This document shows positions 208 through 17,130 of a stretch of 64,000 nucleotides of DNA, piece by piece (the stretch's first letter is position 1; every line of letters starts with the position of its first letter). Made by a program: the position numbers and the translations under genes. The notes under the pieces are model-generated. The model was not told where the DNA came from. It saw only the letters and a program-made list of their open reading frames with translations, and ran no database searches. Location: the IMG/VR virus record IMGVR_UViG_3300002835_000007, positions 124,001 through 188,000 of that record; one strand, 5' to 3'.

Positions 208-675
208 ATGATTTTAAAAAGAAAAGAAAAAGACGGAATCGTAAAAGCAATTTATTCGTCATCAAACATTTGTGCATCGGTTTACAACACTGTTACAAAT
301 GAATTAACAATTATTTTCAGTAATGGAGGCCAATACAAATACGTTGATGTTGCAGCAACTGATTACATGCGTTTTGAAACAGCAGATAGTCAAGGTTCAG
401 TGTTAAACACAAACATCAAAAAATACACTAGCAGCAAATTGGATAATGTTGACACAACTGAAATATTAAAAGAAGTAGAACAAATTAAAGATTTAGAAGT
501 ATCACAGATTACACCAGATGCTGCTGTAAAAGAAATGTTACAAAACATGAGTGATATTATCAGCAACTATTTGAAAAATGGTAATGTAACAACAGCTTCA
601 TTAACTGGATTAAAAGATAAAATTTCAACTTTTGAAAAAGTTAAAAATTTAAAACCAGAAATTGTCCATGAATAA
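208..675 (+). CDS. KTSC domain protein
   Basis: N-half SSNICASVYNTVTNELTIIFSNGGQYKYVDV...F..ADSQGS..N..IK matches the KTSC pattern. Confidence 0.8.
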   Translation: MILKRKEKDGIVKAIYSSSNICASVYNTVTNELTIIFSNGGQYKYVDVAATDYMRFETADSQGSVLNTNIKKYTSSKLDNVDTTEILKEVEQIKDLEVSQITPDAAVKEMLQNMSDIISNYLKNGNVTTASLTGLKDKISTFEKVKNLKPEIVHE

Positions 676-1939
676 TCTAGATAAAACTTATACAGATTTA
701 TTAAAAGACATTTTAGAAAATGGTACTCAGAAAGGTGATAGAACTGGAACGGGTACCATTTCTGTCTTTGGGAGACAAATTCGTCACAAAATGAGTGATG
801 GTTTTCCACTTCTTACAACAAAGAAGATGTATATGAAAGGTATTATAACTGAACTTATATGGTTCTTACGTGGTGATACCAACATCAAATACCTTTTGGA
901 TAATGATTGTCATATTTGGAATGGTGATGCTTATAAGAACTATTGGAATAGTATAGAAACCTCAGAATATGATGGATTTGGGCCTACATCAATTAAGTTA
1001 CCAACATTAACACAAGAAGAATTCATCAACAAAATCAAAACAGATGATAAGTTTGCTAATAAGTGGGGTGATTTAGGTCCAGTATATGGTAAGCAATGGA
1101 GAAGTTGGGGTGGTATAGATACAGACTCATTTTTAAATACAGATAATATTGAAGACCCATTATTAGGTGGTAGAGGTTTATTTTTTAAAGAATATGAGAT
1201 AGACCAAATCGCAAACCTAATCAATGACCTTAAAAACAATCCAGATTCAAGACGTTTGATGGTAAACGCTTGGAATGTTGGAGAATTAGATTCAATGGTA
1301 CTTCCACCTTGTCATTATGGATTTCAAGTTTATACAAGAGAATTGAGTTTGGAAGAAAGAAAAGTTATTGCTAAAAAAGTATTACCAATATTAAATACAT
1401 TTTTAGGAAACCAAAGTGAAGAAGGTTGGATAGAACAATGTGAAAAATTAAATATCCCAACCAGAGCAATTTCATTAATGTGGAATCAACGTTCAGTGGA
1501 TACATTCTTAGGTTTACCATTCAACATTGCTTCTTATGGATTGTTATTGGAAATCATTGCAAAAGAAGTTAATATGGTTCCAGATGAATTAATAGGGAAC
1601 TTGGGTGATGTTCACTTGTATTCAAATCATGTTGAACAAGCCATGGAACAGATTGGTAGATACTTGAGAGTTGATGAAAGAGTTTGTATGTGTTATGAGA
1701 ATCCTAAATTGGATTTAAGTAGATTACAAGAAGGAATGAGTGATGAAAAATTCACAAAAGTGTGTGATGAGTTTGAAATACCCAAAAGAACTAGAGAACC
1801 ATATCCATTACCTACACTAAATATTAAACTTCATTTTAATAATGAACCATCATTTGTTCCAGAACAATGGTTGATTGATGATTTTGAAATAATAGGTTAT
1901 AAAGCCCACCCAACTATAAAAGCACCATTATCAAATTAA
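662..1939 (+). CDS. thyA: Thymidylate synthase with several insertions
   Basis: DRTGTGT, FPLLTTKK, ELIWFLRGDTN, LGPVYGKQWR, catalytic LPPCH, QRSVD.FLGLPFNIASY, GDVHLYSNH. Confidence 0.97.
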   Translation: MSMNNLDKTYTDLLKDILENGTQKGDRTGTGTISVFGRQIRHKMSDGFPLLTTKKMYMKGIITELIWFLRGDTNIKYLLDNDCHIWNGDAYKNYWNSIETSEYDGFGPTSIKLPTLTQEEFINKIKTDDKFANKWGDLGPVYGKQWRSWGGIDTDSFLNTDNIEDPLLGGRGLFFKEYEIDQIANLINDLKNNPDSRRLMVNAWNVGELDSMVLPPCHYGFQVYTRELSLEERKVIAKKVLPILNTFLGNQSEEGWIEQCEKLNIPTRAISLMWNQRSVDTFLGLPFNIASYGLLLEIIAKEVNMVPDELIGNLGDVHLYSNHVEQAMEQIGRYLRVDERVCMCYENPKLDLSRLQEGMSDEKFTKVCDEFEIPKRTREPYPLPTLNIKLHFNNEPSFVPEQWLIDDFEIIGYKAHPTIKAPLSN

Positions 1940-2213: not shown

Positions 2214-2459
2214 ATGGCAAAAATAAATGAAGTACATAGTGTAATAGTTCCAGCTAATGCTGCCAATTTAACAGCACATACTTATTCTGAATTGTATGGT
2301 GGCCCTTCTGGTTGTTCTATTGTTTTGAATGGATTAACTATGAATATGGGTGGTGCATCAAGTATTTATATAAACATAAATTCTGTAAGTGGCGGTACTG
2401 GATGTTACTTACTAGGTGTTAATAAAGATGTTATATTAGGTAGTACATCTTTTAAATAA
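2214..2459 (+). CDS. Hypothetical protein, possibly virion-associated
   Basis: 81 aa ORF preceded by TATTTATA at 2191. Confidence 0.65.
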   Translation: MAKINEVHSVIVPANAANLTAHTYSELYGGPSGCSIVLNGLTMNMGGASSIYININSVSGGTGCYLLGVNKDVILGSTSFK

Positions 2460-2475
2460 AAAACAAATTAAACAT

Positions 2476-3570
2476 ATGAAAAATAAAAATTTAATCAATC
2501 CAATTGGTCTTAAAGGTAACGAAATTCATGAGCGTCAATTAGCACTTATGGGTATTAAACCTTTGAATGAAAATGAAAATAAATCTAACCATGCTGTTGA
2601 ATTAACTAAAGTTGGTCCAGATGGTAATGCTTATGCTATCGTTAGAGAAAACCATGAATATTACATCAAAAAAACTGACAAAACAACTGGTTTAGTTTTA
2701 GAAGATTTCAAATATATTGGTGGTCTACAAAACAAAAAATCTGAAGCTTATCCTTCATATGCTAAAGCAATCAAACAATTAAATTTAAAATTCAAATCAT
2801 TATCTGAATCTTATAACAGAGGTGGTGATATTAACGTATTTGAAGATGATAATTTATTAGAACACCACACTGGTATGAAAGATAACGCTTCATTAAGTGC
2901 TACTAAAGGTGTTGGTGACAATACAGAATATATTGTTGATAAAGCTGGTACTCCGTTATCCAACAAAGCTAAAGAAGGTAAAGAAGAAGGTCAATTCGGT
3001 GACAATGTTGCTGATAAAGATGCTGCTGATGAATTTGAAAAAGTAAACGTTAGCGAAGCATTTGGTATGGGCTTTACTGGTGAAGGTAATTTACATGGGA
3101 ATAAAGCATACATGGGTGATGACATGGAAATGACTGAAGAAGAGATGGCTATTCAAGAAATAATAGATAGAATGGCAGAAGAAGAAAAAGAATACTCTGA
3201 TAAACAAAAAGATTTAGCTGCTTTAGGTGGTGACCCAACAAAAATTGATGGTGAAGATTTCGCTAAATTAAGAGGTGGGGTTGAGTTGGAAGAAATTACA
3301 GTGTCTTCAAGTCAAGTTCATGACTCAATGAGTGTAAATGCATTAGAAAAAGTATTAGATTATTATAGAGATTTATACCGTAATTCTAACGGTAATGAAA
3401 ACATTAAAAATTTAATGGATGACACAGAAGGTAAGTTAAGAGTTTTAAAAACACCAACTACGTCTTCAGTTAAAACAGATGTTGGTCCTTATGGTCATAG
3501 TTTAGAAGAATCTATCAATAGATTAGATACACTTTTAGATGGTGAATTAAAAAAAAAAGCACTAAAGTAA
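2476..3570 (+). CDS. Acidic hypothetical protein; N-terminal part of a putative frameshift fusion
   Basis: 364 aa ORF ending ELKKKALK* across an A10 run. Confidence 0.75.
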   Translation: MKNKNLINPIGLKGNEIHERQLALMGIKPLNENENKSNHAVELTKVGPDGNAYAIVRENHEYYIKKTDKTTGLVLEDFKYIGGLQNKKSEAYPSYAKAIKQLNLKFKSLSESYNRGGDINVFEDDNLLEHHTGMKDNASLSATKGVGDNTEYIVDKAGTPLSNKAKEGKEEGQFGDNVADKDAADEFEKVNVSEAFGMGFTGEGNLHGNKAYMGDDMEMTEEEMAIQEIIDRMAEEEKEYSDKQKDLAALGGDPTKIDGEDFAKLRGGVELEEITVSSSQVHDSMSVNALEKVLDYYRDLYRNSNGNENIKNLMDDTEGKLRVLKTPTTSSVKTDVGPYGHSLEESINRLDTLLDGELKKKALK

Positions 3571-5207
3571 ACGAAGATACAAAATACAAGCTGAAAGTTG
3601 ATGCTCCAGCAGCACCAGCTCCAGCTGAACCTATTTCCGAACCAGCTGATGAGGCTGGTTTTGGTGATTTTGGTAGTGAGGAAGAACCAGTAAAAGACGA
3701 TAAGCCATTTGATGATGAGCCTTTTGACGCTGGTGTTGAAGCTGACGAAGATACCGACCCAAAAAAATTCATTCAACAACTTTCTGGAAAATTAGGTGAA
3801 GCACTTAGAGGTTATACAAAAGAACAAGGTAAACCAGATTTTGAGTTAGAAAAGTTTGCAATTAATTCAGTTATTTCAGCAACAAACACTGCTGAAATGG
3901 ATGAAGAAGATAGAAAAGATATAATCAAAAAAATTAATACATCTGGTGATGATGGTGAAGATAATGAAGATATTAATGCTGATAATCAAGATGATTCCAG
4001 CGATGATTCTGGCGACTTTGGCGATTTCGGTGATGACACTGGTGGTGGCATGCCAGATGATACTGCTGATGATGAAGAAGGGTTACAAGAACTTTCAATC
4101 TATGAAAACTTATTCTTAGATGAACCAAAAAGAAATGAAATGTTTCAACCAAAATCTAATGATTACATGTTTGAAGATGGTGGTTGTTGGCATAATGCTG
4201 AAAGAGTACCTGGAACTAAAAAAGGTGCAAAAGGTTCTTGTAGATTAAAAAAGTTAGAAGAATCTGAAGGTTTATGGGCTAACATACACGCTAAACATGA
4301 TAGAGGTGAAGCACCAGCAAAACCAGGTGATAAAGGTTATCCAGACAAAAAAACATGGGATGAATTAACAGAAACACATGAAAATATGGAAGGTGAAGAA
4401 TCACCTACTAGATATATGTTTTTCAGTAATTTAGAGCAAATGAGAAGACAAGCTGGTTTGATGTTAGATTTAGATGAAGGTAAAATTGAGGCAATATTAA
4501 ATAGTGGTCATGATTGGGCTGCTGACCATATTGCTGAAGCAAAAAACAACATGGACCAAGTGTTTGATTTCTTAATGAATGAGACTAAAAGTGGTGATGC
4601 ATGGAAATCTGTTGATATGGAAGACCATGAAGATGCATTGGAATACGATGGTTCTACTGAAGGTGGTTACGAAGATGATTATGGTTCAGTTGAGAATATT
4701 AATTTGAATGAAGCCGAATATCAAGGTAGAAAAGTTAAATTAGGAAAACCAACCAAAGGTGATTCTAAAAAATTCAAAGTTTACGTTAAAAACAGTAAAG
4801 GTAATGTTGTTAAAGTTAATTTTGGTGACCCTAAAATGGAAATCAAAAGAGATAACCCAAAAAACAAAAAATCATTTAGAGCTAGACATAAATGTTCACA
4901 AGCTAAAGATAGAACAACACCTAAATATTGGTCTTGTAAAATGTGGTCATCAACTCCAGTTTCAAAAATTGTTGGTGAAGACTTGAAAGAATCGATAAAA
5001 AGTAGTATATTTGATAAAAAATATCTAACTATGAAAATTCAAGAAACTTTTAATCATGCAGAGCCAATGGTTGAACCACAAGTTAAACCACAAGTTAAAC
5101 CTAACCCAAGTGAAGTTAAACCTAATGATTTACCTAGCAGAAGAAACAAACCGTATACTATTGAACCTAATACGTTGCCAAAAACAGACCCAAAAGCAAG
5201 TAAATAA
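3546..5207 (+). CDS. -1 frame continuation (includes track ORF 3897-5207); acidic modular putative head protein
   Basis: Frame is open from TGA 3543-3545 to 5207; 3558-3896 reads STKVNEDTKYKLKVDAPAAPAPAEP...DPKKFIQQLSGKLGEALR...EKFAINSVISA with no ATG; C-part has basic Cys/Trp module KVNFGDPKMEIKRDNP..KSFRARHKC...YWSCKMW. Confidence 0.7.
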   Translation: MKKKSTKVNEDTKYKLKVDAPAAPAPAEPISEPADEAGFGDFGSEEEPVKDDKPFDDEPFDAGVEADEDTDPKKFIQQLSGKLGEALRGYTKEQGKPDFELEKFAINSVISATNTAEMDEEDRKDIIKKINTSGDDGEDNEDINADNQDDSSDDSGDFGDFGDDTGGGMPDDTADDEEGLQELSIYENLFLDEPKRNEMFQPKSNDYMFEDGGCWHNAERVPGTKKGAKGSCRLKKLEESEGLWANIHAKHDRGEAPAKPGDKGYPDKKTWDELTETHENMEGEESPTRYMFFSNLEQMRRQAGLMLDLDEGKIEAILNSGHDWAADHIAEAKNNMDQVFDFLMNETKSGDAWKSVDMEDHEDALEYDGSTEGGYEDDYGSVENINLNEAEYQGRKVKLGKPTKGDSKKFKVYVKNSKGNVVKVNFGDPKMEIKRDNPKNKKSFRARHKCSQAKDRTTPKYWSCKMWSSTPVSKIVGEDLKESIKSSIFDKKYLTMKIQETFNHAEPMVEPQVKPQVKPNPSEVKPNDLPSRRNKPYTIEPNTLPKTDPKASK

Positions 5208-5620
5208 TGAAAGATTTGTTTTTAATTTACATGAATAAAATAGGTAAGGACTACAAAGAAAACTACCTATACGAATTTATATTTTCAGACTCAATAGTTG
5301 ATATTGATGGAGATGACTGGGATACTTTTCCAGCCTCTGGAAGACCATCAGCACCACACGACCATTTTATTAAAAAGGTTGGTAGGTTAGAGTCTGAAAT
5401 TAAATTTGATGTAATACAAGATAGCGATACTTTTGCTGTTTGGGATGCCATAGATGGTGTTATAGCATTAGCATGGGAAAACATCAACGCATATGATTCT
5501 TACCCAGAAAAACGAATTTGCTTTAAATTTGGTGAACCAATAAGTGTAGTTGAAACTAAACTTTATGAAAAAGACCTAACATTACAATATAATAAAAATA
5601 ATCATGAAAAACAAAAATAA
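5207..5620 (+). CDS. Hypothetical protein
   Basis: 137 aa ORF overlapping the upstream stop (TAATG). Confidence 0.75.
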   Translation: MKDLFLIYMNKIGKDYKENYLYEFIFSDSIVDIDGDDWDTFPASGRPSAPHDHFIKKVGRLESEIKFDVIQDSDTFAVWDAIDGVIALAWENINAYDSYPEKRICFKFGEPISVVETKLYEKDLTLQYNKNNHEKQK

Positions 5621-6251
5621 ACTACAAGAAGCTTTAGGAGATGATGGTACTACTGTTTTTACACCGAAAAATGAATTAGCATCAACTGTTGACGCTTTAA
5701 AAGGTAAAAAAGTAGATATCCAAGTAACACCAGACTCATTATTCAATGAAGAAGAAGATATTGATGCTGTTATTGAACCACAAGACCAAGCAACAATAAA
5801 ATATTTATCAAATGTGGTTGATGACAAAACTGGTAAAATATCACAACCATTTGCTATTGGTGACAAAAATTACAGAATGGTTAGAGGGGTTAAACCTAAT
5901 AAAGAAGTTGTATTGTCAGTTATGTGTTTAGAGGACAGAAACATTTATGAAGTTGAGCATTTTGAAAAAGAAGTTGCATTACCAATGAAAGAAATGTTAG
6001 AGAAAGAAAACACACAACATGTTGCTAAAGATGATATTGATGAGATAAAAGAAATGGGTTTATCTGAATATAAACACTATGTTGTCAATGAAAAAAGTAA
6101 TAGTTTTAAAAAATTCAAAACAATCCAAGAATTAGTTAAGAACGGATTAAGTGAAGAAGAAAAATATATGAATCTAAGAGAATTTAAAAAATTCTATGAA
6201 GGTAAAGTGTTTGGTAAAAAACAAATAACTGATGAAGGTTCAGAACAATAA
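5604..6251 (+). CDS. Hypothetical protein
   Basis: 215 aa ORF in operon. Confidence 0.75.
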   Translation: MKNKNKLQEALGDDGTTVFTPKNELASTVDALKGKKVDIQVTPDSLFNEEEDIDAVIEPQDQATIKYLSNVVDDKTGKISQPFAIGDKNYRMVRGVKPNKEVVLSVMCLEDRNIYEVEHFEKEVALPMKEMLEKENTQHVAKDDIDEIKEMGLSEYKHYVVNEKSNSFKKFKTIQELVKNGLSEEEKYMNLREFKKFYEGKVFGKKQITDEGSEQ

Positions 6252-6273
6252 TAAAGTTATAATAAATAAGTAA

Positions 6274-7578
6274 ATGAGTAATTATAAAAAAATAGCAGAA
6301 GAAGCACTTAAAAAGTCATTATTAGGTAAGCAATTGAAAGGTGAAAAAAGATTGAATGAATCTGTTGTTTATCCAGAAAATATTTCTGAAAGAATGAATT
6401 CTAAATTAGAAGAAGATTTAATCAAAAGAAACCATTCTTTAGGTAATAATGCTGCGTTGCCAGAAGGTGATGATTCATCATTTGAAGAAAAAGTAATGGG
6501 TGAAAGATTTTCTGAAGTAGTTAAAAGATATAAAAGAGTATTTGAGTGTGACTATGTTAACGAAACAGATGTAATGAGAAATTCATTACCTTTAGTTAAA
6601 GAAACTATTGAGTTAGAGAAAAAACACAAAAAGAAGTTAGAAGAACTGGCAGTTAAAATGATTAGAGAAGAATTTGACATGTCAGAAGATATTGTTGAAA
6701 TAAACGCTGAGTTAACAACTGAAATCAATATTGAGGGGACTAAGAAAAACCCTAGACCTATTATTTCCGAAGTTGAGTTTGAGAATCATGATGAATTAAC
6801 TAATGCTAACAAAGAAGTTTATAAACGTAGATTTCTTAACGCTATGATACAAGGTTCAGCTAAAAAATGTAATCACATGTATCACATGGTTGATGATGAG
6901 TTATCTGATTTGGACCCTAAATTACCTAACAAATATTCAAAACTAATGGCTAACGCTGATTACATGTATTACATAATACCAAATATGGAAAACGGTGTTA
7001 GTGGTGGTGTAGTTAGAGTTGATTTCCCTACAAGTGAAAACCCTAAATGTGTTATAACAGCACAAGCTATGGTTTTCCCAGTGCTTATCCATGAATTAGT
7101 TAAAGGTGTTATGGAAATACTTTCAGCACATGGTTTACCAAAAGATAAAAAAATTGGTAAGTTTGTTGTTGATAAAGCAGATTTCTTAGCAGCTGAACCA
7201 TGGGATATGCGTTTAGGTCCAGCACTTTGGTCTCGTTTTACAAATTTATTTGAAGCTGACGATTTCTCTTTAAAACACCATGTGTTTAGTGAATTATCAG
7301 CGTTGCCAGTAGATGAGTTTAACATGAAAATGAAAGAAGTAATGGCTAATACAAAACAAGGTAAAAAAATTATAACTGATATTGTAAATGAAGTTAAACA
7401 TGGTTTACAAGAAGAAGAGGCAATGAACGAACTTAATAGTTACAACGAAGCAAATTCCGATGGTTATTCCGATGATGAAGGGTTTGATATTGAAGACCTT
7501 ATGAATGATACTAACAATGATGATTCCGATGGTGATGGTTTTACTGATGAAGGGTTTGATATTGGTGAATTATTTTAA
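6274..7578 (+). CDS. Hypothetical protein with acidic tail
   Basis: 434 aa ORF; D/E-rich C-terminus with repeated DEGFDI. Confidence 0.8.
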   Translation: MSNYKKIAEEALKKSLLGKQLKGEKRLNESVVYPENISERMNSKLEEDLIKRNHSLGNNAALPEGDDSSFEEKVMGERFSEVVKRYKRVFECDYVNETDVMRNSLPLVKETIELEKKHKKKLEELAVKMIREEFDMSEDIVEINAELTTEINIEGTKKNPRPIISEVEFENHDELTNANKEVYKRRFLNAMIQGSAKKCNHMYHMVDDELSDLDPKLPNKYSKLMANADYMYYIIPNMENGVSGGVVRVDFPTSENPKCVITAQAMVFPVLIHELVKGVMEILSAHGLPKDKKIGKFVVDKADFLAAEPWDMRLGPALWSRFTNLFEADDFSLKHHVFSELSALPVDEFNMKMKEVMANTKQGKKIITDIVNEVKHGLQEEEAMNELNSYNEANSDGYSDDEGFDIEDLMNDTNNDDSDGDGFTDEGFDIGELF

Positions 7579-7689: not shown

Positions 7690-9456
7690 ATGTTAACTAG
7701 ACAAGAAATATTTAAGGAATATGCTAGGTGTTTAACTAACCCAATTTATGCTATTGAAACATATTTGGAGACGTTTGATAAAACGCAAGAAGGTTTCGTA
7801 CCTTTCAGATTATTTCCTAGACAAAAAGAAATTATATCCGCATACGAAAAGAATAGATTTAACATCGTAACTAAACCTAGGCAAGCTGGTGTATCAACAA
7901 CAACAGCTGCTTATATGTCAATAAAAGTTGGTTTTGCTGACGCAGATAACCCAGAAGCGATTCTAATCATTGCCAATAAGCAAGAGTTAGCTTTCGAGTT
8001 CTTAGCTAAAATTAAAGACTTTTTAGGTCAATTACCTAGATGGGTTTGGGGTAATGAATATTACGGTAATGCTAAAAACGAAGGTAAATCTATATTCCTT
8101 ACGGATTCTAAAAAAGAAATCAAATTACCTAATGGTAGTCGTGTAAAAGCGGTAGCAACATCAAAGGATGCATTAAGGGGTTTTACACCTACATTCTTAA
8201 TCATGGACGAGGCTGCATATATTGATAATGGTGCCGAAGTATTTGGTGCTGCACTTACAGCATTAGGTACTGGGGGTAGAGCAACGCTTATTTCCACACC
8301 TAACGGTATGGATGCGTTGTATTACAAAACATACGACCAAGCTAGAAACAAAAAGAACAACTTCAACATCATTGAAATGAAATGGTATGAAGATTTACGT
8401 TACAATAAGGATTTAAGATGGTATAAGGGGGATGACACTGAAATAGAATATGAATTTACATTTGCATCTTATAACGCTCGTATAGCCGAAGGTTGGAAAC
8501 CTACATCTTCATGGTATGAAGAAATGTGTAGGGGTATGAATAATGACGCTAAAATGATTGCACAAGAGCTTGATGTATCATTTATCGGTTCTGGGGGTAA
8601 CGTAATCAATGAAGAGTATATTGAATTTCATGAGAAACACAATGTTATGATACCTAAATTCACTAGTGGTTTAGAACAAGAGATATGGGTGTGGGAAGAA
8701 CCTCAAGAAGACCATCAATATATTATGGGTGTGGACGTTTCTAGGGGTGATGGAGAGGATTCATCAACTATTGTTATCATAGATTTTACAACTATGGAAC
8801 AAGTAATGGAGTATCAAGGTAAAATACAACCAGATTTATTGGCTCAAATAGTTGAAGAATACGGTGAATTATACAAAGCATATACAGTTGTCGATGTTAC
8901 TGGTGGTATGGGTGTTTCTACGGTATTGAAACTATTGGAATTTGAATACAAAAGATTGCATTATGATGATTCTAGTGGTAAAATATTATCTGCTAGACAA
9001 AGAGAGTTGACATCATATAACAAACAAAACAAAATACCAGGTTTCCACGCAACAAACGTGCGTCTACCAATGATTTCAAATTTAGAGTATAAGATAAGAA
9101 CCAATGCTGTTAAGATACGTTCTAGTCGAATTATTTCTGAAATGAAAACATTTATTTATAAAAATGGTAGACCAGACCACATGGAAGGTTATCATGATGA
9201 TTTACTTATGTCATTGGGAATGGCTTTGTGGGTTATGGAACATTCATTTAAGAATTTAGAAAGATTAGAAAAACAGACAAAGGCAATTTTGTCTAGTTGG
9301 GTAACTTCTAGTAATGTTCAATCATCCCCAACAAGAACAACAATAAACCCAGAAACAAAGAAACCAGAAACTAAAATAAACCCTAATCACGCAGCATATA
9401 AAAATGTTCAAGACCCTAAAGGTGAATATGCATGGTTATTCGGTAAAATGAAATAA
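7690..9456 (+). CDS. terL: Terminase large subunit (T4 gp17-like)
   Basis: FRLFPRQ Q-motif, KPRQAGVSTT, LIMDEAA Walker B, ISTPNG, nuclease GVDVSRGDGEDSS and HDDLLMS. Confidence 0.93.
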   Translation: MLTRQEIFKEYARCLTNPIYAIETYLETFDKTQEGFVPFRLFPRQKEIISAYEKNRFNIVTKPRQAGVSTTTAAYMSIKVGFADADNPEAILIIANKQELAFEFLAKIKDFLGQLPRWVWGNEYYGNAKNEGKSIFLTDSKKEIKLPNGSRVKAVATSKDALRGFTPTFLIMDEAAYIDNGAEVFGAALTALGTGGRATLISTPNGMDALYYKTYDQARNKKNNFNIIEMKWYEDLRYNKDLRWYKGDDTEIEYEFTFASYNARIAEGWKPTSSWYEEMCRGMNNDAKMIAQELDVSFIGSGGNVINEEYIEFHEKHNVMIPKFTSGLEQEIWVWEEPQEDHQYIMGVDVSRGDGEDSSTIVIIDFTTMEQVMEYQGKIQPDLLAQIVEEYGELYKAYTVVDVTGGMGVSTVLKLLEFEYKRLHYDDSSGKILSARQRELTSYNKQNKIPGFHATNVRLPMISNLEYKIRTNAVKIRSSRIISEMKTFIYKNGRPDHMEGYHDDLLMSLGMALWVMEHSFKNLERLEKQTKAILSSWVTSSNVQSSPTRTTINPETKKPETKINPNHAAYKNVQDPKGEYAWLFGKMK

Positions 9457-9754: not shown

Positions 9755-11785
9755 ATGGCAAATAAAAATTTAACAATATTTCAAAAACTAAACCAAGTTA
9801 TTAGTCCAGATGGTGTAAAGTTGCAACCAAAAGACTCAACTAAAAGATATAACATTGGTTCTAGTGAGTTATTAAAAACAACTAGTCGTGAGGAATTTGA
9901 AACAACAAAATTACAAGCTCAACAAAATAAATATTTAGGACAAGTTTGGAAAAAAGTTGAGAATGGAATGTTTCAACAATCTATAAACTATGAAACAACT
10001 CGTATTGGTTCGTACTCTGATTTTGAATCAATGGAGTTTTATCCAGCTATTGCGGCAGCGTTAGATGTGATGATGGAAGAATCAACTACTGTAAACAGAG
10101 TTGGTAAAATGTTGAATGTTTATTCTGATAGTAAACGAATTAAAGGTATATTAGAAGATTTATTTTATAATCGATTAGACATACATACATCATTACCTAT
10201 GTGGACTAGAAACACATGTAAGTATGGTGATAACTTTGTATTTTTAAATATAAATGATAGAGATGGTATTATTGCTGCAAAACAAATGCCTAACTATGAA
10301 ATGGAAAGACGTGAAGGTAGTTTGTTTGACCTAATCACTGGTAGAGAAAAAAATAAACCAGAAGATGAAGCTTCAGACAAAGTTAAATTTTATTGGAGAG
10401 GTCGTGATGTTGAATTTAATTCATGGCAAATGGCACATTTTAGATTACTAGGTGATGATAGACGTTTACCTTATGGTACATCTGTATTAGAGAAGGCTAG
10501 ACGTGTATGGAAACAGTTATTGTTATCTGAGGATTCAATGCTTGTATATCGTGTGACTAGAGCTCCAGAAAGACGTGTTTACAAAATATATGTTGGTAAC
10601 ATTGATGATGCTGATGTTGAACAATATGTAAATGCAATTGCTGATAGGTTTAAACGTATGCCAATCATTGACCCACAAACTGGTCAAATTGATTTACGTT
10701 ACAATCAGTTATCTAATGACCAAGATTTCTTTATTCCAGTTAGGGATGAGTCTGCACCAAACCCAATTGATACGTTGCCAGGTGCATCTAACTTGGACCA
10801 AATTGCGGATATTGAATATTTAAGAGGTAATTTATTTACAGCATTACGTGTACCTAAACCATTCTTAGGTTTTGATGAAACATCTGGTGAAGGTAAGAAC
10901 TTAGCTTTACAAGATATTCGTTTCTCTAGAACTATTAATCGCATTCAACAATCAATGATTCAAGAATTAAATAAGATTGCAATTATTCACTTATACATAT
11001 TAGGTTTTGAAGATGAATTGGATAATTTTTCATTAACACTTAATAACCCATCAACTCAAGCAGAGATGCTTAACGTTGAACATTTACAACTTAAAATTAC
11101 AGCTCTTAAAGATGCTGTGTCTGATATTGGTAACGGATTTGGTGCTATGTCATGGACACGTGCTCATAGAGAAATTTTAGGATGGTCTGATGATGAAATC
11201 AAACAAGACTTACTTGAACAACGTATGGAGAAAGCAGCAGCTGCTGAATTGGCTAATACTGCTAATGTTATTAAACATACTAGAATGTTTGACGAAGTTG
11301 ATAATATTTTTGGTGACATTGAAGCTGCTAAAGCTGGCGGTGGCGGTGCACCAGAAGAAGGTGGTGATGCTGCTGGAGGCGGAGGCGGAGGCGGAAGCTT
11401 CGGTGGTGGTTTCGGAGGTGGAACAACTGGTGGTGAAGATTTAGATTTTGGTGATGAAACACCAGCAGAAGGTGAAGCACCAGCAGAAGGTGAAGCACCA
11501 GCAGAAGAGGGTGCTGCTCCAGAGGAACCAGCTCCAACTCCAACTATAACTGAATCATTGAATAGGTTGAATAATTTATTAACAGAAAGAAAAACTACCT
11601 TATCAAAAACTTTAGATAACCGTAAAAGAAAATATAAAAACAGACATTTAGATGTTCTTGTTGAAAGTATTAATTCTGATAACGAAGTTAAATCTGAAAA
11701 AGTTAAAATATACGATAAGAATTTAAAAATAAATTCTGAATTAGATAATATTATAGATGACATCGATAAAATGTTAGAAGAGTAA
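9755..11785 (+). CDS. Portal protein (T4 gp20-like) with Gly/Glu/Pro-rich C-terminal extension
   Basis: YGTSVLEKARRVWKQL.L.EDSMLVYR.TRAPERRVY.I.VGN, DFFIPVR, IDTLPGASNL, DIEYL...L..AL.VPK..L. Confidence 0.93.
   Translation: MANKNLTIFQKLNQVISPDGVKLQPKDSTKRYNIGSSELLKTTSREEFETTKLQAQQNKYLGQVWKKVENGMFQQSINYETTRIGSYSDFESMEFYPAIAAALDVMMEESTTVNRVGKMLNVYSDSKRIKGILEDLFYNRLDIHTSLPMWTRNTCKYGDNFVFLNINDRDGIIAAKQMPNYEMERREGSLFDLITGREKNKPEDEASDKVKFYWRGRDVEFNSWQMAHFRLLGDDRRLPYGTSVLEKARRVWKQLLLSEDSMLVYRVTRAPERRVYKIYVGNIDDADVEQYVNAIADRFKRMPIIDPQTGQIDLRYNQLSNDQDFFIPVRDESAPNPIDTLPGASNLDQIADIEYLRGNLFTALRVPKPFLGFDETSGEGKNLALQDIRFSRTINRIQQSMIQELNKIAIIHLYILGFEDELDNFSLTLNNPSTQAEMLNVEHLQLKITALKDAVSDIGNGFGAMSWTRAHREILGWSDDEIKQDLLEQRMEKAAAAELANTANVIKHTRMFDEVDNIFGDIEAAKAGGGGAPEEGGDAAGGGGGGGSFGGGFGGGTTGGEDLDFGDETPAEGEAPAEGEAPAEEGAAPEEPAPTPTITESLNRLNNLLTERKTTLSKTLDNRKRKYKNRHLDVLVESINSDNEVKSEKVKIYDKNLKINSELDNIIDDIDKMLEE
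11461..11506 (+). repeat. 18-bp tandem repeat (EGEAPA) in portal tail
   Basis: accagcagaaggtgaagc repeated about 2.5 times. Confidence 0.85.
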
Positions 11786-13169: not shown

Positions 13170-13892
13170 ATGGATATAAATTATAAAGACTTTAAAATAT
13201 TAAAACGTGGTGAAAGCGGTTGGGGTGGACTAATTGAACACGATGCTGGATACATTAGTCCAGATGAACCTAGAAACCATCCTTTCATTAACGAAATCAA
13301 AAAATTAGAATCTGGCAAAGTTGTTATTGCAGAGCCTCTTATCGTTTATGTCGTATTACAAAAATTCGGTGTCTTAAATAGAAATGGTAGAGTTTATCCA
13401 GAAGTAGTTCTAAAAAGTCAAGACAAACTTTATCAAGAAGCAATTCGTGAACGCAGAGCTGTAGGTGAATTAGACCACCCAGAAAGTTCTATTATTGCTG
13501 GTGATAGAATTTCACACAATATTATTGAAACATGGTGGGAAGGTCATACTCTTATGGGTAAGATGGAAATCATAATGAGCCCAGGTTTTATTAACTATGG
13601 AATTATATCATGTAAAGGTGATGATGTTGCCAACATGTTAAGAAATAGAATTAAAATCGGTGTTTCTTCTCGTGGCGTTGGTTCACTTAAAGAAGGTAAA
13701 AATGGTGAGCAAATAGTTCAAGACGATTTTGAAATAATTTGTTGGGACGTTGTAACAGCACCTAGTACACCAGGTTCATGGATGGGAACGTCAATAGAAG
13801 AATTAAAACCTTACGTTGAGAACGAAGTAAAAACCAAGCCTTTGTTAAAAGAAAACTTAATAGATGATTTAGATAAATTTTTATCTGAATAA
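13170..13892 (+). CDS. Prohead core protease (T4 gp21-like)
   Basis: NRNGRVYP, GELDHP, SHNI, GVSSRGVGS, DF.I..WD.V..PS.PG. Confidence 0.93.
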   Translation: MDINYKDFKILKRGESGWGGLIEHDAGYISPDEPRNHPFINEIKKLESGKVVIAEPLIVYVVLQKFGVLNRNGRVYPEVVLKSQDKLYQEAIRERRAVGELDHPESSIIAGDRISHNIIETWWEGHTLMGKMEIIMSPGFINYGIISCKGDDVANMLRNRIKIGVSSRGVGSLKEGKNGEQIVQDDFEIICWDVVTAPSTPGSWMGTSIEELKPYVENEVKTKPLLKENLIDDLDKFLSE

Positions 13893-13901
13893 TTTTTTTT
13901 T

Positions 13902-13924
13902 TGCGAAAAAAAGGTTTTTTCGCA
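13902..13924 (+). terminator. Hairpin between protease and scaffold genes
   Basis: TGCGAAAAAA AGG TTTTTTCGCA inverted repeat. Confidence 0.45.
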
Positions 13925-15303: not shown

Positions 15304-17130
15304 ATGTCACATTTATTAACATCTGGACAAGTAGGTAACATCGGATTAAACCACATGAAAGCTATCCGTTTGGAAACTCAAAACAAATGGGAATCATTAG
15401 GATTCTTAGAGGGTCTTAGAGGCCACGTAAAAGAAAACATCGCTCAGTTATATGAAAACCAAGCGTCTTCATTATTAACTGAAACTACGACAGCAACAAA
15501 CTCTGGTTCTTTCGAAACTGTAGTTTTCCCTATCGTAAGAAGAGTTTTCTCTAAATTATTAGCTAACGATATCGTATCTGTACAAGCTATGAACATGCCA
15601 ATTGGTAAATTGTTCTTCTTTGTTCCACAAACATCTTCAAGAGTTGATTCTGCTGGTAATAAAGGTTCTGCTTATGATACTGATACTTACACTAACTCTC
15701 AGTACTCTGCTCACACTTCATTTGCAAACACTGGTATGCCATCATGTGTATTACCAGCTGCTGGAACATGTGTTGCTACAGTAATGGAAGCTAAAAACTT
15801 ATATGATATTTTCTATAACGATGGTTTATTTGACAACTCTAAAGGTACTTTAACTATTAGAACTCATACTAACGTTAGTAAATTATCTTTAGGTGCTAAT
15901 GGTGAATTCTCTGGATTAGCTGCTGCTGGTACTTTAGCTACTGCTACTGATGGTTCAGTTAGAGAAATTATCGTTGGTGTTTCTGGTTTCTCACCAAACA
16001 ACACTAACAAAGCGGTTATGACTGGTGCTGACGGTAACGATATGGATACTGAGTCTTTCTTAGCTTCATTAAACGTTGTTACTACAGCTAACATCTACGA
16101 TAAAGATGGTAACGTTGTTGTTTCAACTAACAAATCTGTACCATTCAGATTAGTAACTCAAAAATATGGTAAAGGAATTGTAGATTATACATCAATTACA
16201 GATGCTACTGGTACTGTATACTTAGCTTTAGATTTAAGCCACCCAGTTGGAACAACTGCTGCTGGTTCTGCTGCTGCTGGTACAGCTACTTATGATGGTT
16301 ATGTTGGTGCTTCTGCAACTACTGTATCTGCATTCACATTCAACGCTGCTTGGGCTGAGTATGCAACATTAGAACTTGAAACTGAAATGGGAGAAGTATC
16401 TTTCAAATTAGATGAAGTTGTTGTATCTGTTGAAGAAAGAAAATTAAGAGCTACTTGGTCTCCAGAGTTAGCACAAGACGTTAGTGCATTCCACAACATC
16501 GATGCTGAAGCTGAGTTAACTGCAATGTTATCTGAACAAGTTGCTGCTGAGATTGACCGTGAAATCTTGAGAGATATCCGTAAAGCTGCTGCATGGCAAT
16601 TAAGATGGGATTACAACGGATGGAGAAAAGCTTCTTCTGCTGCATCACCATATACTCAAAAAGAGTGGAACCAAACTTTAATTACTAAATTAAACCAAAT
16701 CTCTGCTCAAATCCACAAATCTACGTTAAGAGGTGGTGCTAACTTCATCGTGGTATCTTCTGAGATATCTGCAATCTTTGATGATTTAGAATACTTCCAC
16801 GTATCTGATGCTAACCCAGAGCAAGACCAATACAACATGGGTATTGAAAGAATCGGTTCTTTAAGCGGACGTTACCAAGTGTACCGTGACCCTTATGCAC
16901 CAGCTTACTCTATCATCATTGGTCACAAAGGAAAATCATTGTTAGACACTGGTTATATCTACGCACCATACGTGCCGTTACAATTAACTCCAACAATGTA
17001 CAACCCTTTCAACTTTGCTCCAGTGAAAGGTATCATGACACGTTACGCTAAGAAAGTAGTAAACAATCGTTTCTACGGACACTTGAGAGTTGACGGTGTA
17101 ATGACATTCAACCCTAACGAATTAAGATAG
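15304..17130 (+). CDS. Major capsid protein (T4 gp23-like)
   Basis: VRRVF..LLA.DIVSVQAM..P.G..F, RKLRATWSPELAQD..AFH.IDAEAEL, EIDREI, G..YAPYVPL, GIMTRY. Confidence 0.96.
   Translation: MSHLLTSGQVGNIGLNHMKAIRLETQNKWESLGFLEGLRGHVKENIAQLYENQASSLLTETTTATNSGSFETVVFPIVRRVFSKLLANDIVSVQAMNMPIGKLFFFVPQTSSRVDSAGNKGSAYDTDTYTNSQYSAHTSFANTGMPSCVLPAAGTCVATVMEAKNLYDIFYNDGLFDNSKGTLTIRTHTNVSKLSLGANGEFSGLAAAGTLATATDGSVREIIVGVSGFSPNNTNKAVMTGADGNDMDTESFLASLNVVTTANIYDKDGNVVVSTNKSVPFRLVTQKYGKGIVDYTSITDATGTVYLALDLSHPVGTTAAGSAAAGTATYDGYVGASATTVSAFTFNAAWAEYATLELETEMGEVSFKLDEVVVSVEERKLRATWSPELAQDVSAFHNIDAEAELTAMLSEQVAAEIDREILRDIRKAAAWQLRWDYNGWRKASSAASPYTQKEWNQTLITKLNQISAQIHKSTLRGGANFIVVSSEISAIFDDLEYFHVSDANPEQDQYNMGIERIGSLSGRYQVYRDPYAPAYSIIIGHKGKSLLDTGYIYAPYVPLQLTPTMYNPFNFAPVKGIMTRYAKKVVNNRFYGHLRVDGVMTFNPNELR

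What the first reader, a model, noticed from the sequence alone, without database searches (positions are those of the whole stretch)
3541..3900. Putative -1 frameshift / transcriptional slippage at TTA AAA AAA AAA joining two head-region ORFs
ORF 2476-3570 ends ...GAA TTA AAA AAA AAA GCA CTA AAG TAA over a run of 10 A (3549-3558). The -1 frame opens right after a TGA at 3543-3545 and stays open to 5207. Its first ~117 codons have no ATG but read as convincing protein (STKVNEDTKYKLKVDAPAAPAPAEP...DPKKFIQQLSGKLGEALRGY...EKFAINSVISAT) and run into the 3897 ORF. A -1 ribosomal shift (A AAA AAA slippery site) or one extra A from polymerase slippage would give a ~910 aa fusion alongside the 364 aa short form. 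Known phage programmed frameshifts are mostly in tail assembly chaperones or capsid genes; one in an acidic gene upstream of the terminase would be unusual.
Basis: partly seen in the sequence, partly recalled or inferred. Interest (0 to 1): 0.8.

Follow-up and report, generated by a model that had tools for sequence, protein, structure and literature searches.

The report
Conserved poly-A frameshift site in phage
A run of ten A's at the end of a phage gene is a deeply conserved programmed slippage site: one stretch of DNA makes both a short 364-residue protein and a 910-residue fusion with the start-less gene behind it, a new and very widespread example of a known trick.

Summary

- **Anatomy.** ORF 2476-3570 ends in A10 (3549-3558) followed by TAA. 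The -1 frame runs from 3546 to 5207. It has no ATG, GTG or TTG before 3897.
- **Not an assembly error.** Nine independent assemblies of this phage or near relatives all read A10.
- **Conservation.** I found 57 distinct junction sequences in relatives down to about 40-50% protein identity. In all 57 the downstream protein lies in the -1 frame. The A-run is 10 long in 50, 9 in 4 and 11 in 3. The 0 and +1 frames both stop within 25 nt.
- **Spacer evidence.** The spacer behind the run has at least eight length classes, and all keep the frame.
- **Family.** Of the 150 best family representatives, 107 end in KKK plus nine or fewer residues. Some relatives are natural in-frame fusions, and three of those still carry A10.
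- **Mechanism.** RNA polymerase slippage is the most likely cause, because the run is never shorter than 9 and is held at synonymous sites. Ribosomal -1 shifting is not excluded. No direct RNA or protein evidence could be obtained.
- **Extra feature.** A selected RNA hairpin (3589-3626) follows the site. Its role is unknown.
- **Function.** The function of both proteins is unknown.

The parts
2476..3570 (+). Gene for the short form (364 aa). It has a conserved N-terminal domain of about 130 aa, a variable middle and a helical C-terminal part ending in LKKK-ALK.
   Evidence: The family has 747 clusters at E<=1e-3. The N-domain alignment is A3. The AlphaFold2 model has a confident N-domain at residues 40-130.
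3543..3545 (+). TGA that closes the -1 frame just before the run. It marks the 5' limit of the zone where the shift can occur.
   Evidence: In relatives the -1 frame opens between 36 nt before the run and 2 nt inside it.
3549..3558 (+). A10 slippage site (TT-A10-G). In the 0 frame it reads TTA AAA AAA AAA.
   Evidence: The run is 10 long in 50 of 57 distinct junctions, 9 in 4 and 11 in 3. All three Lys codons are AAA in 57 of 57, although AAA is only 84% of Lys codons elsewhere. The preceding codon nearly always ends in A, whatever its amino acid.
3563..3565 (+). TAA in the +1 frame. Transcripts with one A fewer, or two more, would also give a short product.
   Evidence: The +1 frame stops within 25 nt of the run in 57 of 57 junctions.
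3568..3570 (+). 0-frame stop TAA of the short form.
   Evidence: The 0-frame stop lies 1-24 nt after the run in 57 of 57 junctions, TAA in 54 and TAG in 3.
3558..5207 (+). Part of the -1 frame specific to the long form (549 codons plus stop). It holds the K-Y-K-L-K motif (3582-3596), a Pro/Ala linker, an acidic conserved domain (PFDDEPFDAG, DPKKFI and onward) and several small Cys-containing modules. Those modules also occur as stand-alone genes in marine phages.
3897..5207 (+). The 436-aa ORF that gene callers report from the first ATG. It is probably not a real start, because it cuts off 113 conserved residues.
   Evidence: P0001-P0004 were called this way in close relatives, while more distant homologs cover the whole region.
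3589..3626 (+). G+C-rich RNA hairpin starting inside the KYKLK codons. It is present in nearly all lineages with different stem sequences. Its role is unknown.
   Evidence: -15.4 kcal/mol, z = -2.96; against synonymous recodings the mean z is -3.0 over 57 junctions, versus -0.04 to -0.66 in ten control windows. One synonymous compensatory pair is seen between L132 and L140.

Best explanation
This is one gene that makes two products through a programmed slippage site.

The genome encodes the short form directly: 364 aa, stopping 9 nt after the run. The rest of the long form (549 codons) sits in the -1 frame and has no start codon of its own. In a fraction of expression events the reading frame moves by -1 within the A10 run, and a 910-aa fusion is made that continues ...LKKK-STKVNEDTKYKLK....

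The most likely cause is RNA polymerase slipping on the A10:T10 hybrid. That yields some mRNAs with 11 A's (or 8), which ordinary translation reads into the long form. Transcripts with 9, 10 or 12 A's give short forms, because the 0 and +1 frames both stop at once. A contribution from ribosomes shifting -1 or sliding on A AAA AAA is possible.

Shown: the anatomy, its conservation, the coding nature of the start-less region, and the existence of natural in-frame fusions.

Inferred: that slippage happens, at which level it happens, its efficiency, and what the two proteins do.

My split is about 0.9 that this is a programmed two-product recoding site. Given that, about 0.6 that it is mainly transcriptional and 0.3 that it is mainly ribosomal.
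For: 1. **Frame relation.** In 57 of 57 distinct junctions from independent contigs the downstream protein is in the -1 frame. The run-to-KYxLK spacer takes lengths of 14, 17, 23, 26, 29, 35, 80 and 95 nt and always keeps the frame.
2. **No own start.** At least 13 junctions have no ATG, GTG or TTG between the run and the conserved domain, and others have one only 90-200 nt in. The TTG that gene callers use is simply a Leu codon; it varies as TTG 32, TTA 11, CTG 10, CTT 2, CTA 2.
3. **Protein-level selection.** Window positions 3558-3896 differ from relatives mostly at third codon positions of the -1 frame, for example 1/0/13 and 13-18/3-7/34-45.
4. **Nucleotide-level selection on the run.** All 171 Lys codons at the site are AAA, against 84% elsewhere. 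The codon before the run ends in A for Leu, Val, Gly, Pro, Ser and Ile alike.
5. **Family-wide ending.** 107 of 150 cluster representatives end in KKK plus nine or fewer residues.
6. **The long form is a real protein.** Ten representatives are in-frame fusions without any run, for example L173. Six are in-frame fusions with KKK.
7. **Features favouring the polymerase.**
   - The run is never shorter than 9, although a heptamer would suffice for -1 ribosomal frameshifting.
   - A10 matches the 9-10 bp RNA-DNA hybrid (PMC5009743).
   - Bacterial RNA polymerase needs long A/T runs to slip (PMC6260861).
   - A10 is kept in L170, L171 and L172, where the long form is already in frame and slippage would give the short form. 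The same logic was shown experimentally for tssM1 and tssM3 (PMC4256274).
   - No stimulatory structure sits at the canonical 5-9 nt spacing.
8. **Not an assembly error.** A10 appears in nine independent assemblies of this lineage.
Against: - There is no direct evidence of slippage. Only assembled Logan contigs were available for the public runs. They simply end on either side of the run and carry no indel information.
- No protein data exist.
- The run also contains perfectly phased A AAA AAA heptamers, and consecutive AAA codons are known to make ribosomes slide (PMC4363877). A ribosomal mechanism therefore fits the same anatomy.
- A selected hairpin lies 24-36 nt or more downstream. It is weaker or absent in in-frame relatives, which hints at a translational or mRNA-level component that I cannot explain.
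- In 32 of 57 lineages a TTG exists that could in principle allow some independent initiation.
- The host and its RNA polymerase are unknown.
Confidence: 0.8

Rival explanations
1. The shift is mainly ribosomal. Ribosomes translating the three AAA codons slip back one base (tRNA-Lys re-pairing on A AAA AAA) or slide on the poly-A tract, using a homogeneous A10 mRNA.
For: - Correctly phased A AAA AAA heptamers are present in every junction.
- Ribosome sliding on iterated AAA codons is documented (PMC4363877).
- A selected downstream hairpin exists and is weaker or absent in in-frame relatives.
- An SD-like GAAGG/GGTGA lies 4-10 nt upstream in 32 of 57 junctions.
Against: - The hairpin starts 24-36 nt after the run, and more than 100 nt after it in two lineages. 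It keeps register with the KYKLK motif and the stop, not with the run. Canonical stimulators sit 5-9 nt away.
- The SD-like element is absent in 25 of 57 junctions.
- Nothing in a heptamer mechanism explains why the run is never shorter than 9, why the extra A's are held at synonymous sites, or why the efficient A AAA AAG form appears only once.
Confidence: 0.3
2. These are two independent genes. The downstream protein starts at a non-canonical or nearby codon (CTG 3591, ATT 3546) or by termination-reinitiation, and the A-run merely encodes a conserved KKK tail.
For: - Many homologs were called as stand-alone genes of 480-690 aa starting at M/L-K-L.
- TTG occupies that position in 32 of 57 junctions.
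Against: - The same codon is TTA, CTT or CTA in 15 junctions and CTG in 10.
- Protein conservation (S/T-L-x-E-x-T-K-Y-K) extends upstream of it right to the run.
- All spacer indels preserve the frame relative to the run, and the frame relation to the upstream gene is -1 in 57 of 57 junctions. Independent genes would not show that.
- A protein-level KKK does not need AAA in 171 of 171 codons, nor an A-ending preceding codon.
- Natural in-frame fusions exist.
Confidence: 0.05
3. This is an artefact or decay. Either a homopolymer miscount in assembly means the true genome is A11 and in frame, or the gene is broken, or DNA-level phase variation is at work.
For: Homopolymers are error-prone. Logan contigs break at the run.
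Against: - Nine independent assemblies from different samples and assemblers give A10.
- 57 divergent junctions would all have to be miscounted by exactly one base.
- A9 and A11 variants arise by edge substitutions and still need -1.
- In-frame relatives also have A10.
- The downstream frame is under purifying selection across the whole family.
Confidence: 0.03

Closest known systems
Citrobacter rodentium tssM1 and Yersinia pseudotuberculosis tssM3 (poly-A transcriptional frameshifting, PMC4256274)
   Same: - A run of about 11 A's made of three AAA Lys codons, followed by a nearby stop.
- Short and long variants come from one gene.
- In one organism slippage makes the long form and in the other the short form. 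Here that is mirrored by the out-of-frame majority versus L170-L172.
- Reported efficiency is about 15-25%.
   Different: - tssM is a bacterial secretion-system gene, not a phage gene.
- Those authors found the tssM site in only two organisms. This one is conserved across hundreds of sequence clusters.
- Slippage is not demonstrated experimentally here.
Thermus thermophilus dnaX (A9 transcriptional slippage) and E. coli dnaX (A AAA AAG -1 ribosomal frameshift)
   Same: A Lys-codon A-run yields two products that share an N-terminus. The dnaX pair shows that either mechanism can serve the same purpose at a similar sequence. This rests on my own knowledge plus the review PMC5009743.
   Different: In dnaX the recoded product is the shorter one. 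E. coli dnaX has an upstream SD and a hairpin at close spacing, and neither is found at that spacing here.
Phage lambda G/GT and other tail-assembly-chaperone -1 frameshifts
   Same: A conserved programmed shift in a tailed-phage morphogenesis region that makes a fixed ratio of short form to C-terminally extended form.
   Different: - The slippery site is of a different type (G GGA AAG versus A10).
- The genomic position differs. This site is not between the tail tube and tape-measure genes. It lies between thymidylate synthase and the terminase/head block.
- The proteins are unrelated.
- The extension is far larger: 549 aa added to 361.
Retroviral Gag/Gag-Pol and T4 capsid-targeting propeptides (functional analogy only)
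   Same: The idea is that a minority fusion of an assembly protein to a cargo lets the cargo be packaged in a set ratio. A T4-type prohead protease gene is present at 13170-13892, and a [LIV]-x-E motif precedes KYKLK in all 57 junctions. The T4 gp21 cleavage motif is L/I-x-E (PMC9026906).
   Different: This is purely speculative here. The [LIV] codon (xTA followed by A) overlaps the 0-frame TAA, so the stop may force it. There is no evidence that either form is in the virion.
Paramyxovirus P/V editing, potyvirus P3N-PIPO and Shigella mxiE/spa13
   Same: Polymerase stuttering on a short homopolymer gives access to a start-less overlapping frame. In paramyxoviruses, which product is encoded unedited differs between lineages (PMC5009743).
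   Different: Different polymerases (viral RdRp) or bacterial genes, and shorter runs.

Membership tests
Programmed transcriptional slippage site | Homopolymeric A or T run about as long as the RNA-DNA hybrid (8-9 or more) inside a coding region | tested here: met
   A10 at 3549-3558. The run is 9-11 long in all 57 junctions and never shorter.
Programmed transcriptional slippage site | Run conserved at the nucleotide level beyond what the protein requires | tested here: met
   171 of 171 Lys codons at the site are AAA, against 84% background. The preceding codon ends in A across six different amino acids.
Programmed transcriptional slippage site | Conserved trans-frame ORF that codes for protein and cannot be reached otherwise | tested here: met
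Programmed transcriptional slippage site | Length heterogeneity of the run in mRNA but not in DNA | tested here: inconclusive
   DNA assemblies all read A10. The RNA runs are held only as contigs, which end at 3546 and restart at 3565/3566.
Programmed transcriptional slippage site | Two protein products detected, and abolished by AAA-to-AAG substitution | not testable with these tools
   Needs expression experiments or proteomics.
-1 programmed ribosomal frameshift | X XXY YYZ slippery heptamer in 0-frame phase | tested here: met
   A AAA AAA is present in phase in all junctions.
-1 programmed ribosomal frameshift | Stimulatory hairpin or pseudoknot 5-9 nt downstream | tested here: not met
   A selected hairpin exists, but it starts 24-36 nt after the run, or more than 100 nt in L157 and L169. 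It tracks the KYKLK motif rather than the run.
-1 programmed ribosomal frameshift | Upstream SD-like stimulator (dnaX type) | tested here: inconclusive
   An SD-like tetramer lies within 22 nt upstream in 32 of 57 junctions. It coincides with the codons of a conserved E-G.
Tail assembly chaperone (G/GT-type) frameshift | Gene pair located between the tail tube and tape-measure genes, with chaperone homology | tested here: not met
   The neighbours are thymidylate synthase, TerL, portal, protease and MCP. Neither piece hits Pfam, and neither has a named PHROG family.
T4-type capsid-targeted, protease-processed head protein | L/I-x-E cleavage motif between the targeting part and the mature part | tested here: inconclusive
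   [LIV]-x-E lies 0-3 residues before K[YF]xLK in 57 of 57 junctions. However, the [LIV] codon overlaps the 0-frame TAA, which could explain it.
T4-type capsid-targeted, protease-processed head protein | Presence in proheads or virions and cleavage by the prohead protease | not testable with these tools
   No cultured member. The upstream ORF has no tblastn hit in 50,697 phage records.

The most novel reading that the evidence does not exclude
This would be the first deeply conserved, programmed transcriptional-slippage gene in tailed dsDNA phages. The A10 tract would set the ratio of an assembly or targeting protein to its fusion with a modular 549-aa cargo, for packaging into the head (a Gag/Gag-Pol-like logic). 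The distal hairpin, held in register with the 0-frame stop, would be a new kind of element that tunes that ratio.
Probability: 0.25. Interest if true: 0.75.

Novelty: new member of a known kind. Interest (0 to 1): 0.62.

Why it matters
**Annotation.** Gene callers currently handle this locus badly. They either truncate the second gene to the first ATG, as with the 436-aa ORF here, or invent a TTG start. Hundreds of database entries for a very common family of large aquatic phages are therefore mis-annotated. The real long product of 900-odd residues is missing from protein databases.

**Recoding biology.** Poly-A slippage that makes two length variants is proven in a few bacterial genes. This would be a phage example conserved over a large radiation. 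It comes with natural controls: lineages where the long form is in frame but the tract is kept, and lineages with a fused gene and no tract.

That makes it a good system for three questions:
- How is the short-to-long ratio set?
- Is the polymerase or the ribosome responsible?
- What does the conserved downstream hairpin do?

It also gives a handle on a pair of abundant phage proteins of unknown function that sit next to the head-assembly genes.

Tried and rejected
- **Isolated phages.** Megablast of 2400-5300 and tblastn of the upstream ORF against 50,697 phage records found nothing. The downstream piece matched only through small modules shared with Pelagibacter, cyano-, Roseobacter and Flavobacterium phages. 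No isolated relative is available.
- **Protein families.** Pfam gave nothing for either piece. PHROGs gave nothing for the upstream ORF and only unnamed families for the downstream piece.
- **ESM Atlas.** It returned only unnamed viral clusters and DUFs.
- **Structure.** The AlphaFold2 model of the short form (pLDDT 68) had no Foldseek match in the PDB. In BFVD it matched only two uncharacterised phage proteins. Function remains unknown.
- **Reads.** All public runs holding the sequence are kept as contigs. Laying three RNA-library runs and one run of unknown type gave no indel information, and the contigs stop at the run.
- **Further assemblies.** A flank-anchored scan of JGI metagenomes for other run lengths found only A10.
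- **Hairpin consensus.** RNAalifold on a MAFFT alignment of the hairpin region found no consensus structure because stem lengths vary. I relied instead on the synonymous-recoding test with control windows.
- **Rfam.** No match.
- **Ideas I rejected:**
  - A T4-late-promoter reading of the conserved AAATATAAG. The variation TAT/TAC/TTT is of the protein type.
  - A ribosome-collision model for the hairpin. The spacing differs between lineages.
  - Treating [LIV]-x-E as clear evidence of a protease site. It overlaps the 0-frame stop.
Full report
**1. Observation**

The sequence is as described.
- ORF 2476-3570 (364 aa) ends GAA TTA AAA AAA AAA GCA CTA AAG TAA.
- The run of ten A's is 3549-3558.
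- The -1 frame is closed by TGA at 3543-3545 and then open to 5207.
- The ORF listing finds no ATG, GTG or TTG in that frame before ATG 3897.
- The +1 frame stops at TAA 3563-3565 and the 0 frame at TAA 3568-3570.

Any shift into the long frame must therefore happen inside a 22-nt zone that is almost entirely the A-run. A -1 shift, or one extra A, gives 361 + 549 = 910 residues.

The window is 30% G+C, so an A10 run is not improbable by itself (about 0.8 expected per strand). It is still the only A-run of 9 or more in 64 kb.

**2. Not an assembly error**

- Five IMG/VR contigs from different samples are identical across the junction, including A10.
- Two ENA contigs at about 83% protein identity in the downstream gene have the same junction.
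- A flank-anchored scan of JGI metagenomes that allowed 7-14 bases between the flanks found two more contigs, both A10.

**3. The start-less region is real coding sequence**

A search with the -1-frame piece (3561-5204) found thousands of relatives. Many proteins of 480-690 aa cover 95-98% of it, including the first 112 residues.

Window positions 3558-3896 differ from relatives mainly at third codon positions of the -1 frame. The counts by codon position are 1/0/13 for L006 and 13-18/3-7/34-45 for five others. The nearest relatives (P0001-P0004) were, like the window, called only from the internal ATG.

**4. The junction is conserved across a large radiation**

I fetched loci with the downstream protein and with the conserved N-terminal domain of the upstream protein. 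This gave 57 distinct junction sequences in which an upstream-family ORF is followed by the downstream-family domain.
- In all 57 the downstream frame is -1.
- The A-run is 10 in 50 junctions, 9 in 4 and 11 in 3.
- The 9- and 11-base runs differ by substitutions at the edge of the run and keep the same frame relation.
- The 0-frame stop lies 1-24 nt after the run, and the +1 frame also stops within 25 nt.
- The -1 frame opens no earlier than 36 nt before the run.

Flanking sequences differ widely. Between the run and a conserved K-[YF]-x-L-K motif the spacer is 14, 17, 23, 26, 29, 35, 80 or 95 nt for A10 junctions. Repeated indels have therefore all preserved the frame from the run onward.

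The TTG that gene callers use as a start is the Leu of KYKLK. It varies as TTG 32, TTA 11, CTG 10, CTT 2, CTA 2. At least 13 junctions have no canonical start between the run and the conserved acidic domain.

**5. Nucleotide-level constraint**

Elsewhere in these genes Lys is AAA in 84% and AAG in 16% of cases. At the site all 171 Lys codons are AAA. The codon before the run ends in A whether it encodes Leu, Val, Gly, Pro, Ser or Ile.

**6. Family-wide view**

A full phmmer search of the upstream ORF against 1.84 billion representatives gave 747 clusters at E<=1e-3. The best 150 break down as follows:

| Class | Count |
|---|---|
| End in KKK plus nine or fewer residues | 107 |
| In-frame fusions to the downstream protein that still contain KKK | 6 |
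| In-frame fusions with no KKK | 10 |
| Truncated or divergent | 27 |

At the DNA level three of the KKK fusions (L170, L171, L172) still carry A10. There the phase, or a 1-nt difference after the run, puts the long form in frame, and gaining or losing one A leads to a stop within 1-6 codons. L173, a distant 402-aa fusion, has no run at all.

On a FastTree of the N-domain the run-less fusions fall mostly in one sister group. The KKK forms make a 111-row group with the KKK fusions nested inside at two or more places. The root is not established.

The long form is therefore a genuine protein, and the tract is kept whichever form is in frame.

**7. Mechanism**

The anatomy fits both polymerase slippage and ribosomal -1 shifting, and both give the same junction peptide. 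I favour the polymerase, at about 0.6 against 0.3, for these reasons:
- The run is never shorter than 9, although seven A's would do for a ribosomal shift.
- The efficient A AAA AAG form is seen only once.
- Ten matches the 9-10 bp RNA-DNA hybrid (PMC5009743).
- Bacterial RNA polymerase needs long runs to slip (PMC6260861).
- The tract persists in in-frame lineages. The same was shown experimentally for tssM1 and tssM3, where an A11 tract gives about 15-25% frameshifted product (PMC4256274).
- No stimulatory structure sits at canonical spacing, and an SD-like element upstream is present in only 32 of 57 junctions.

Against this, iterated AAA codons do make ribosomes slide (PMC4363877), and there is an unexplained hairpin (section 8).

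Direct evidence could not be obtained. All public runs holding the sequence are stored as contigs. Those contigs end at 3546 and restart at 3565/3566 without indel information.

**8. An additional element**

A G+C-rich hairpin begins inside the KYKLK codons. In the window it spans 3589-3626, with -15.4 kcal/mol and z = -2.96.

Across the 57 junctions the 57 nt at this position fold much better than synonymous recodings of the same peptide (mean z = -3.0, with 84% below -1.64). Ten control windows in the same genes give mean z between -0.04 and -0.66, including the adjacent Pro/Ala-rich window.

Stem sequences differ between lineages. At least one pair of close relatives shows a synonymous compensatory change: L132 has ...GATGCACCAGCATC... 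and L140 has ...GACGCACCAGCGTC..., and both encode DAPAS.

The hairpin keeps register with the KYKLK motif, and in many lineages with a 0-frame TAA about 18 nt upstream. It does not keep register with the run. It is weaker or absent in three of the four in-frame relatives examined. I cannot assign it a role. It might be a distal translational stimulator or a 3' stabiliser or attenuator for the short-form message, but neither is supported.

**9. Context and function**

The window is a distant T4-like head module:

| Gene | Coordinates |
|---|---|
| Thymidylate synthase | 662-1939 |
| The gene pair | 2476-5207 |
| Three unknown ORFs | 5207-7578 |
| TerL, about 30% identical to Microcystis, Flavobacterium and cyanophage TerL | 7690-9456 |
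| Portal | 9755-11785 |
| Prohead protease | 13170-13892 |
| Major capsid protein | 15304-17130 |

The order ClpB-like, KTSC, ThyA, pair, TerL is conserved in relatives. Related contigs reach 200-360 kb, and the samples are lakes and other waters.

Neither protein has a recognisable family or fold.

A [LIV]-x-E motif precedes KYKLK in every lineage. It resembles the T4 gp21 cleavage motif (PMC9026906). Giant phages use long N-terminal propeptides for capsid targeting (PMC5694885). A Gag/Gag-Pol-like cargo-loading role is therefore conceivable. However, the [LIV] codon overlaps the 0-frame TAA, so this is only a lead.

**10. Comparison and novelty**

The closest known case is poly-A transcriptional frameshifting in tssM. 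Thermus and E. coli dnaX, Shigella mxiE/spa13 and the phage tail-chaperone frameshifts are further relatives in kind.

This is not a tail-chaperone frameshift: the position and the proteins are both wrong. Four literature searches found no description of this family or site.

I rate it a new member of a known kind. It is unusually well conserved and widespread, lies in an uncultivated phage clade, and has immediate consequences for annotation.

**Verdict**
- The level at which slippage occurs is unresolved.
- The function of the proteins is unknown.

Noticed in passing
window 3589-3626, and the equivalent position in L006-L169: A selected G+C-rich RNA hairpin lies right after the KYKLK codons. 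Its stems vary in sequence between lineages but stay paired. It keeps register with the motif and the 0-frame stop, not with the A-run, and it is weak or absent in in-frame relatives.
   Followed up: partly
window 3567-3575 (V-N-E) and the same place in 57 junctions: [LIV]-x-E immediately before K[YF]xLK resembles the T4 prohead protease cleavage motif. The [LIV] codon (xTA followed by A) overlaps a 0-frame TAA, sometimes a second one, which may be the real constraint.
   Followed up: partly
window 4200-5000 (-1-frame protein residues about 230-470): The long form's C-terminal half is built of small modules, for example KKFKVYVKN...FRARHKC...YWSC. These occur as stand-alone small genes in Pelagibacter, cyano-, Roseobacter, Flavobacterium and Methylophilales phages, and even in Nitrosopumilaceae spindle-shaped viruses. 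Homologs gain and lose or duplicate these modules.
   Followed up: no
window 662-1939: The thymidylate synthase ORF is 425 aa, starts at TTG, and matches the Pfam model in two stretches. Relatives range from 329 to 455 aa, which suggests a variable insertion inside ThyA.
   Followed up: no
window 13893-13902: A T10 run lies directly after the stop of the prohead protease gene, in the gap before the next ORF. It is the only other homopolymer of 10 in the window.
   Followed up: no
window 15304-17130: The major capsid protein is 608 aa, but the PHROG major-head profile matches only residues 331-585. It therefore has an unusually long N-terminal part, which could be a propeptide or an extra domain.
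   Followed up: no
L170 6802-7713: In this relative the terminase is called as two consecutive Terminase_6N genes (260 aa, then 581 aa running off the locus). TerL may be split or interrupted there.
   Followed up: no
window 3546 and 3565/3566 in runs X20 and X24: Logan contigs from independent runs end exactly on either side of the A-run. This could reflect branching from length heterogeneity, or simply the assembler's handling of low-complexity words. The data do not distinguish these.
   Followed up: no
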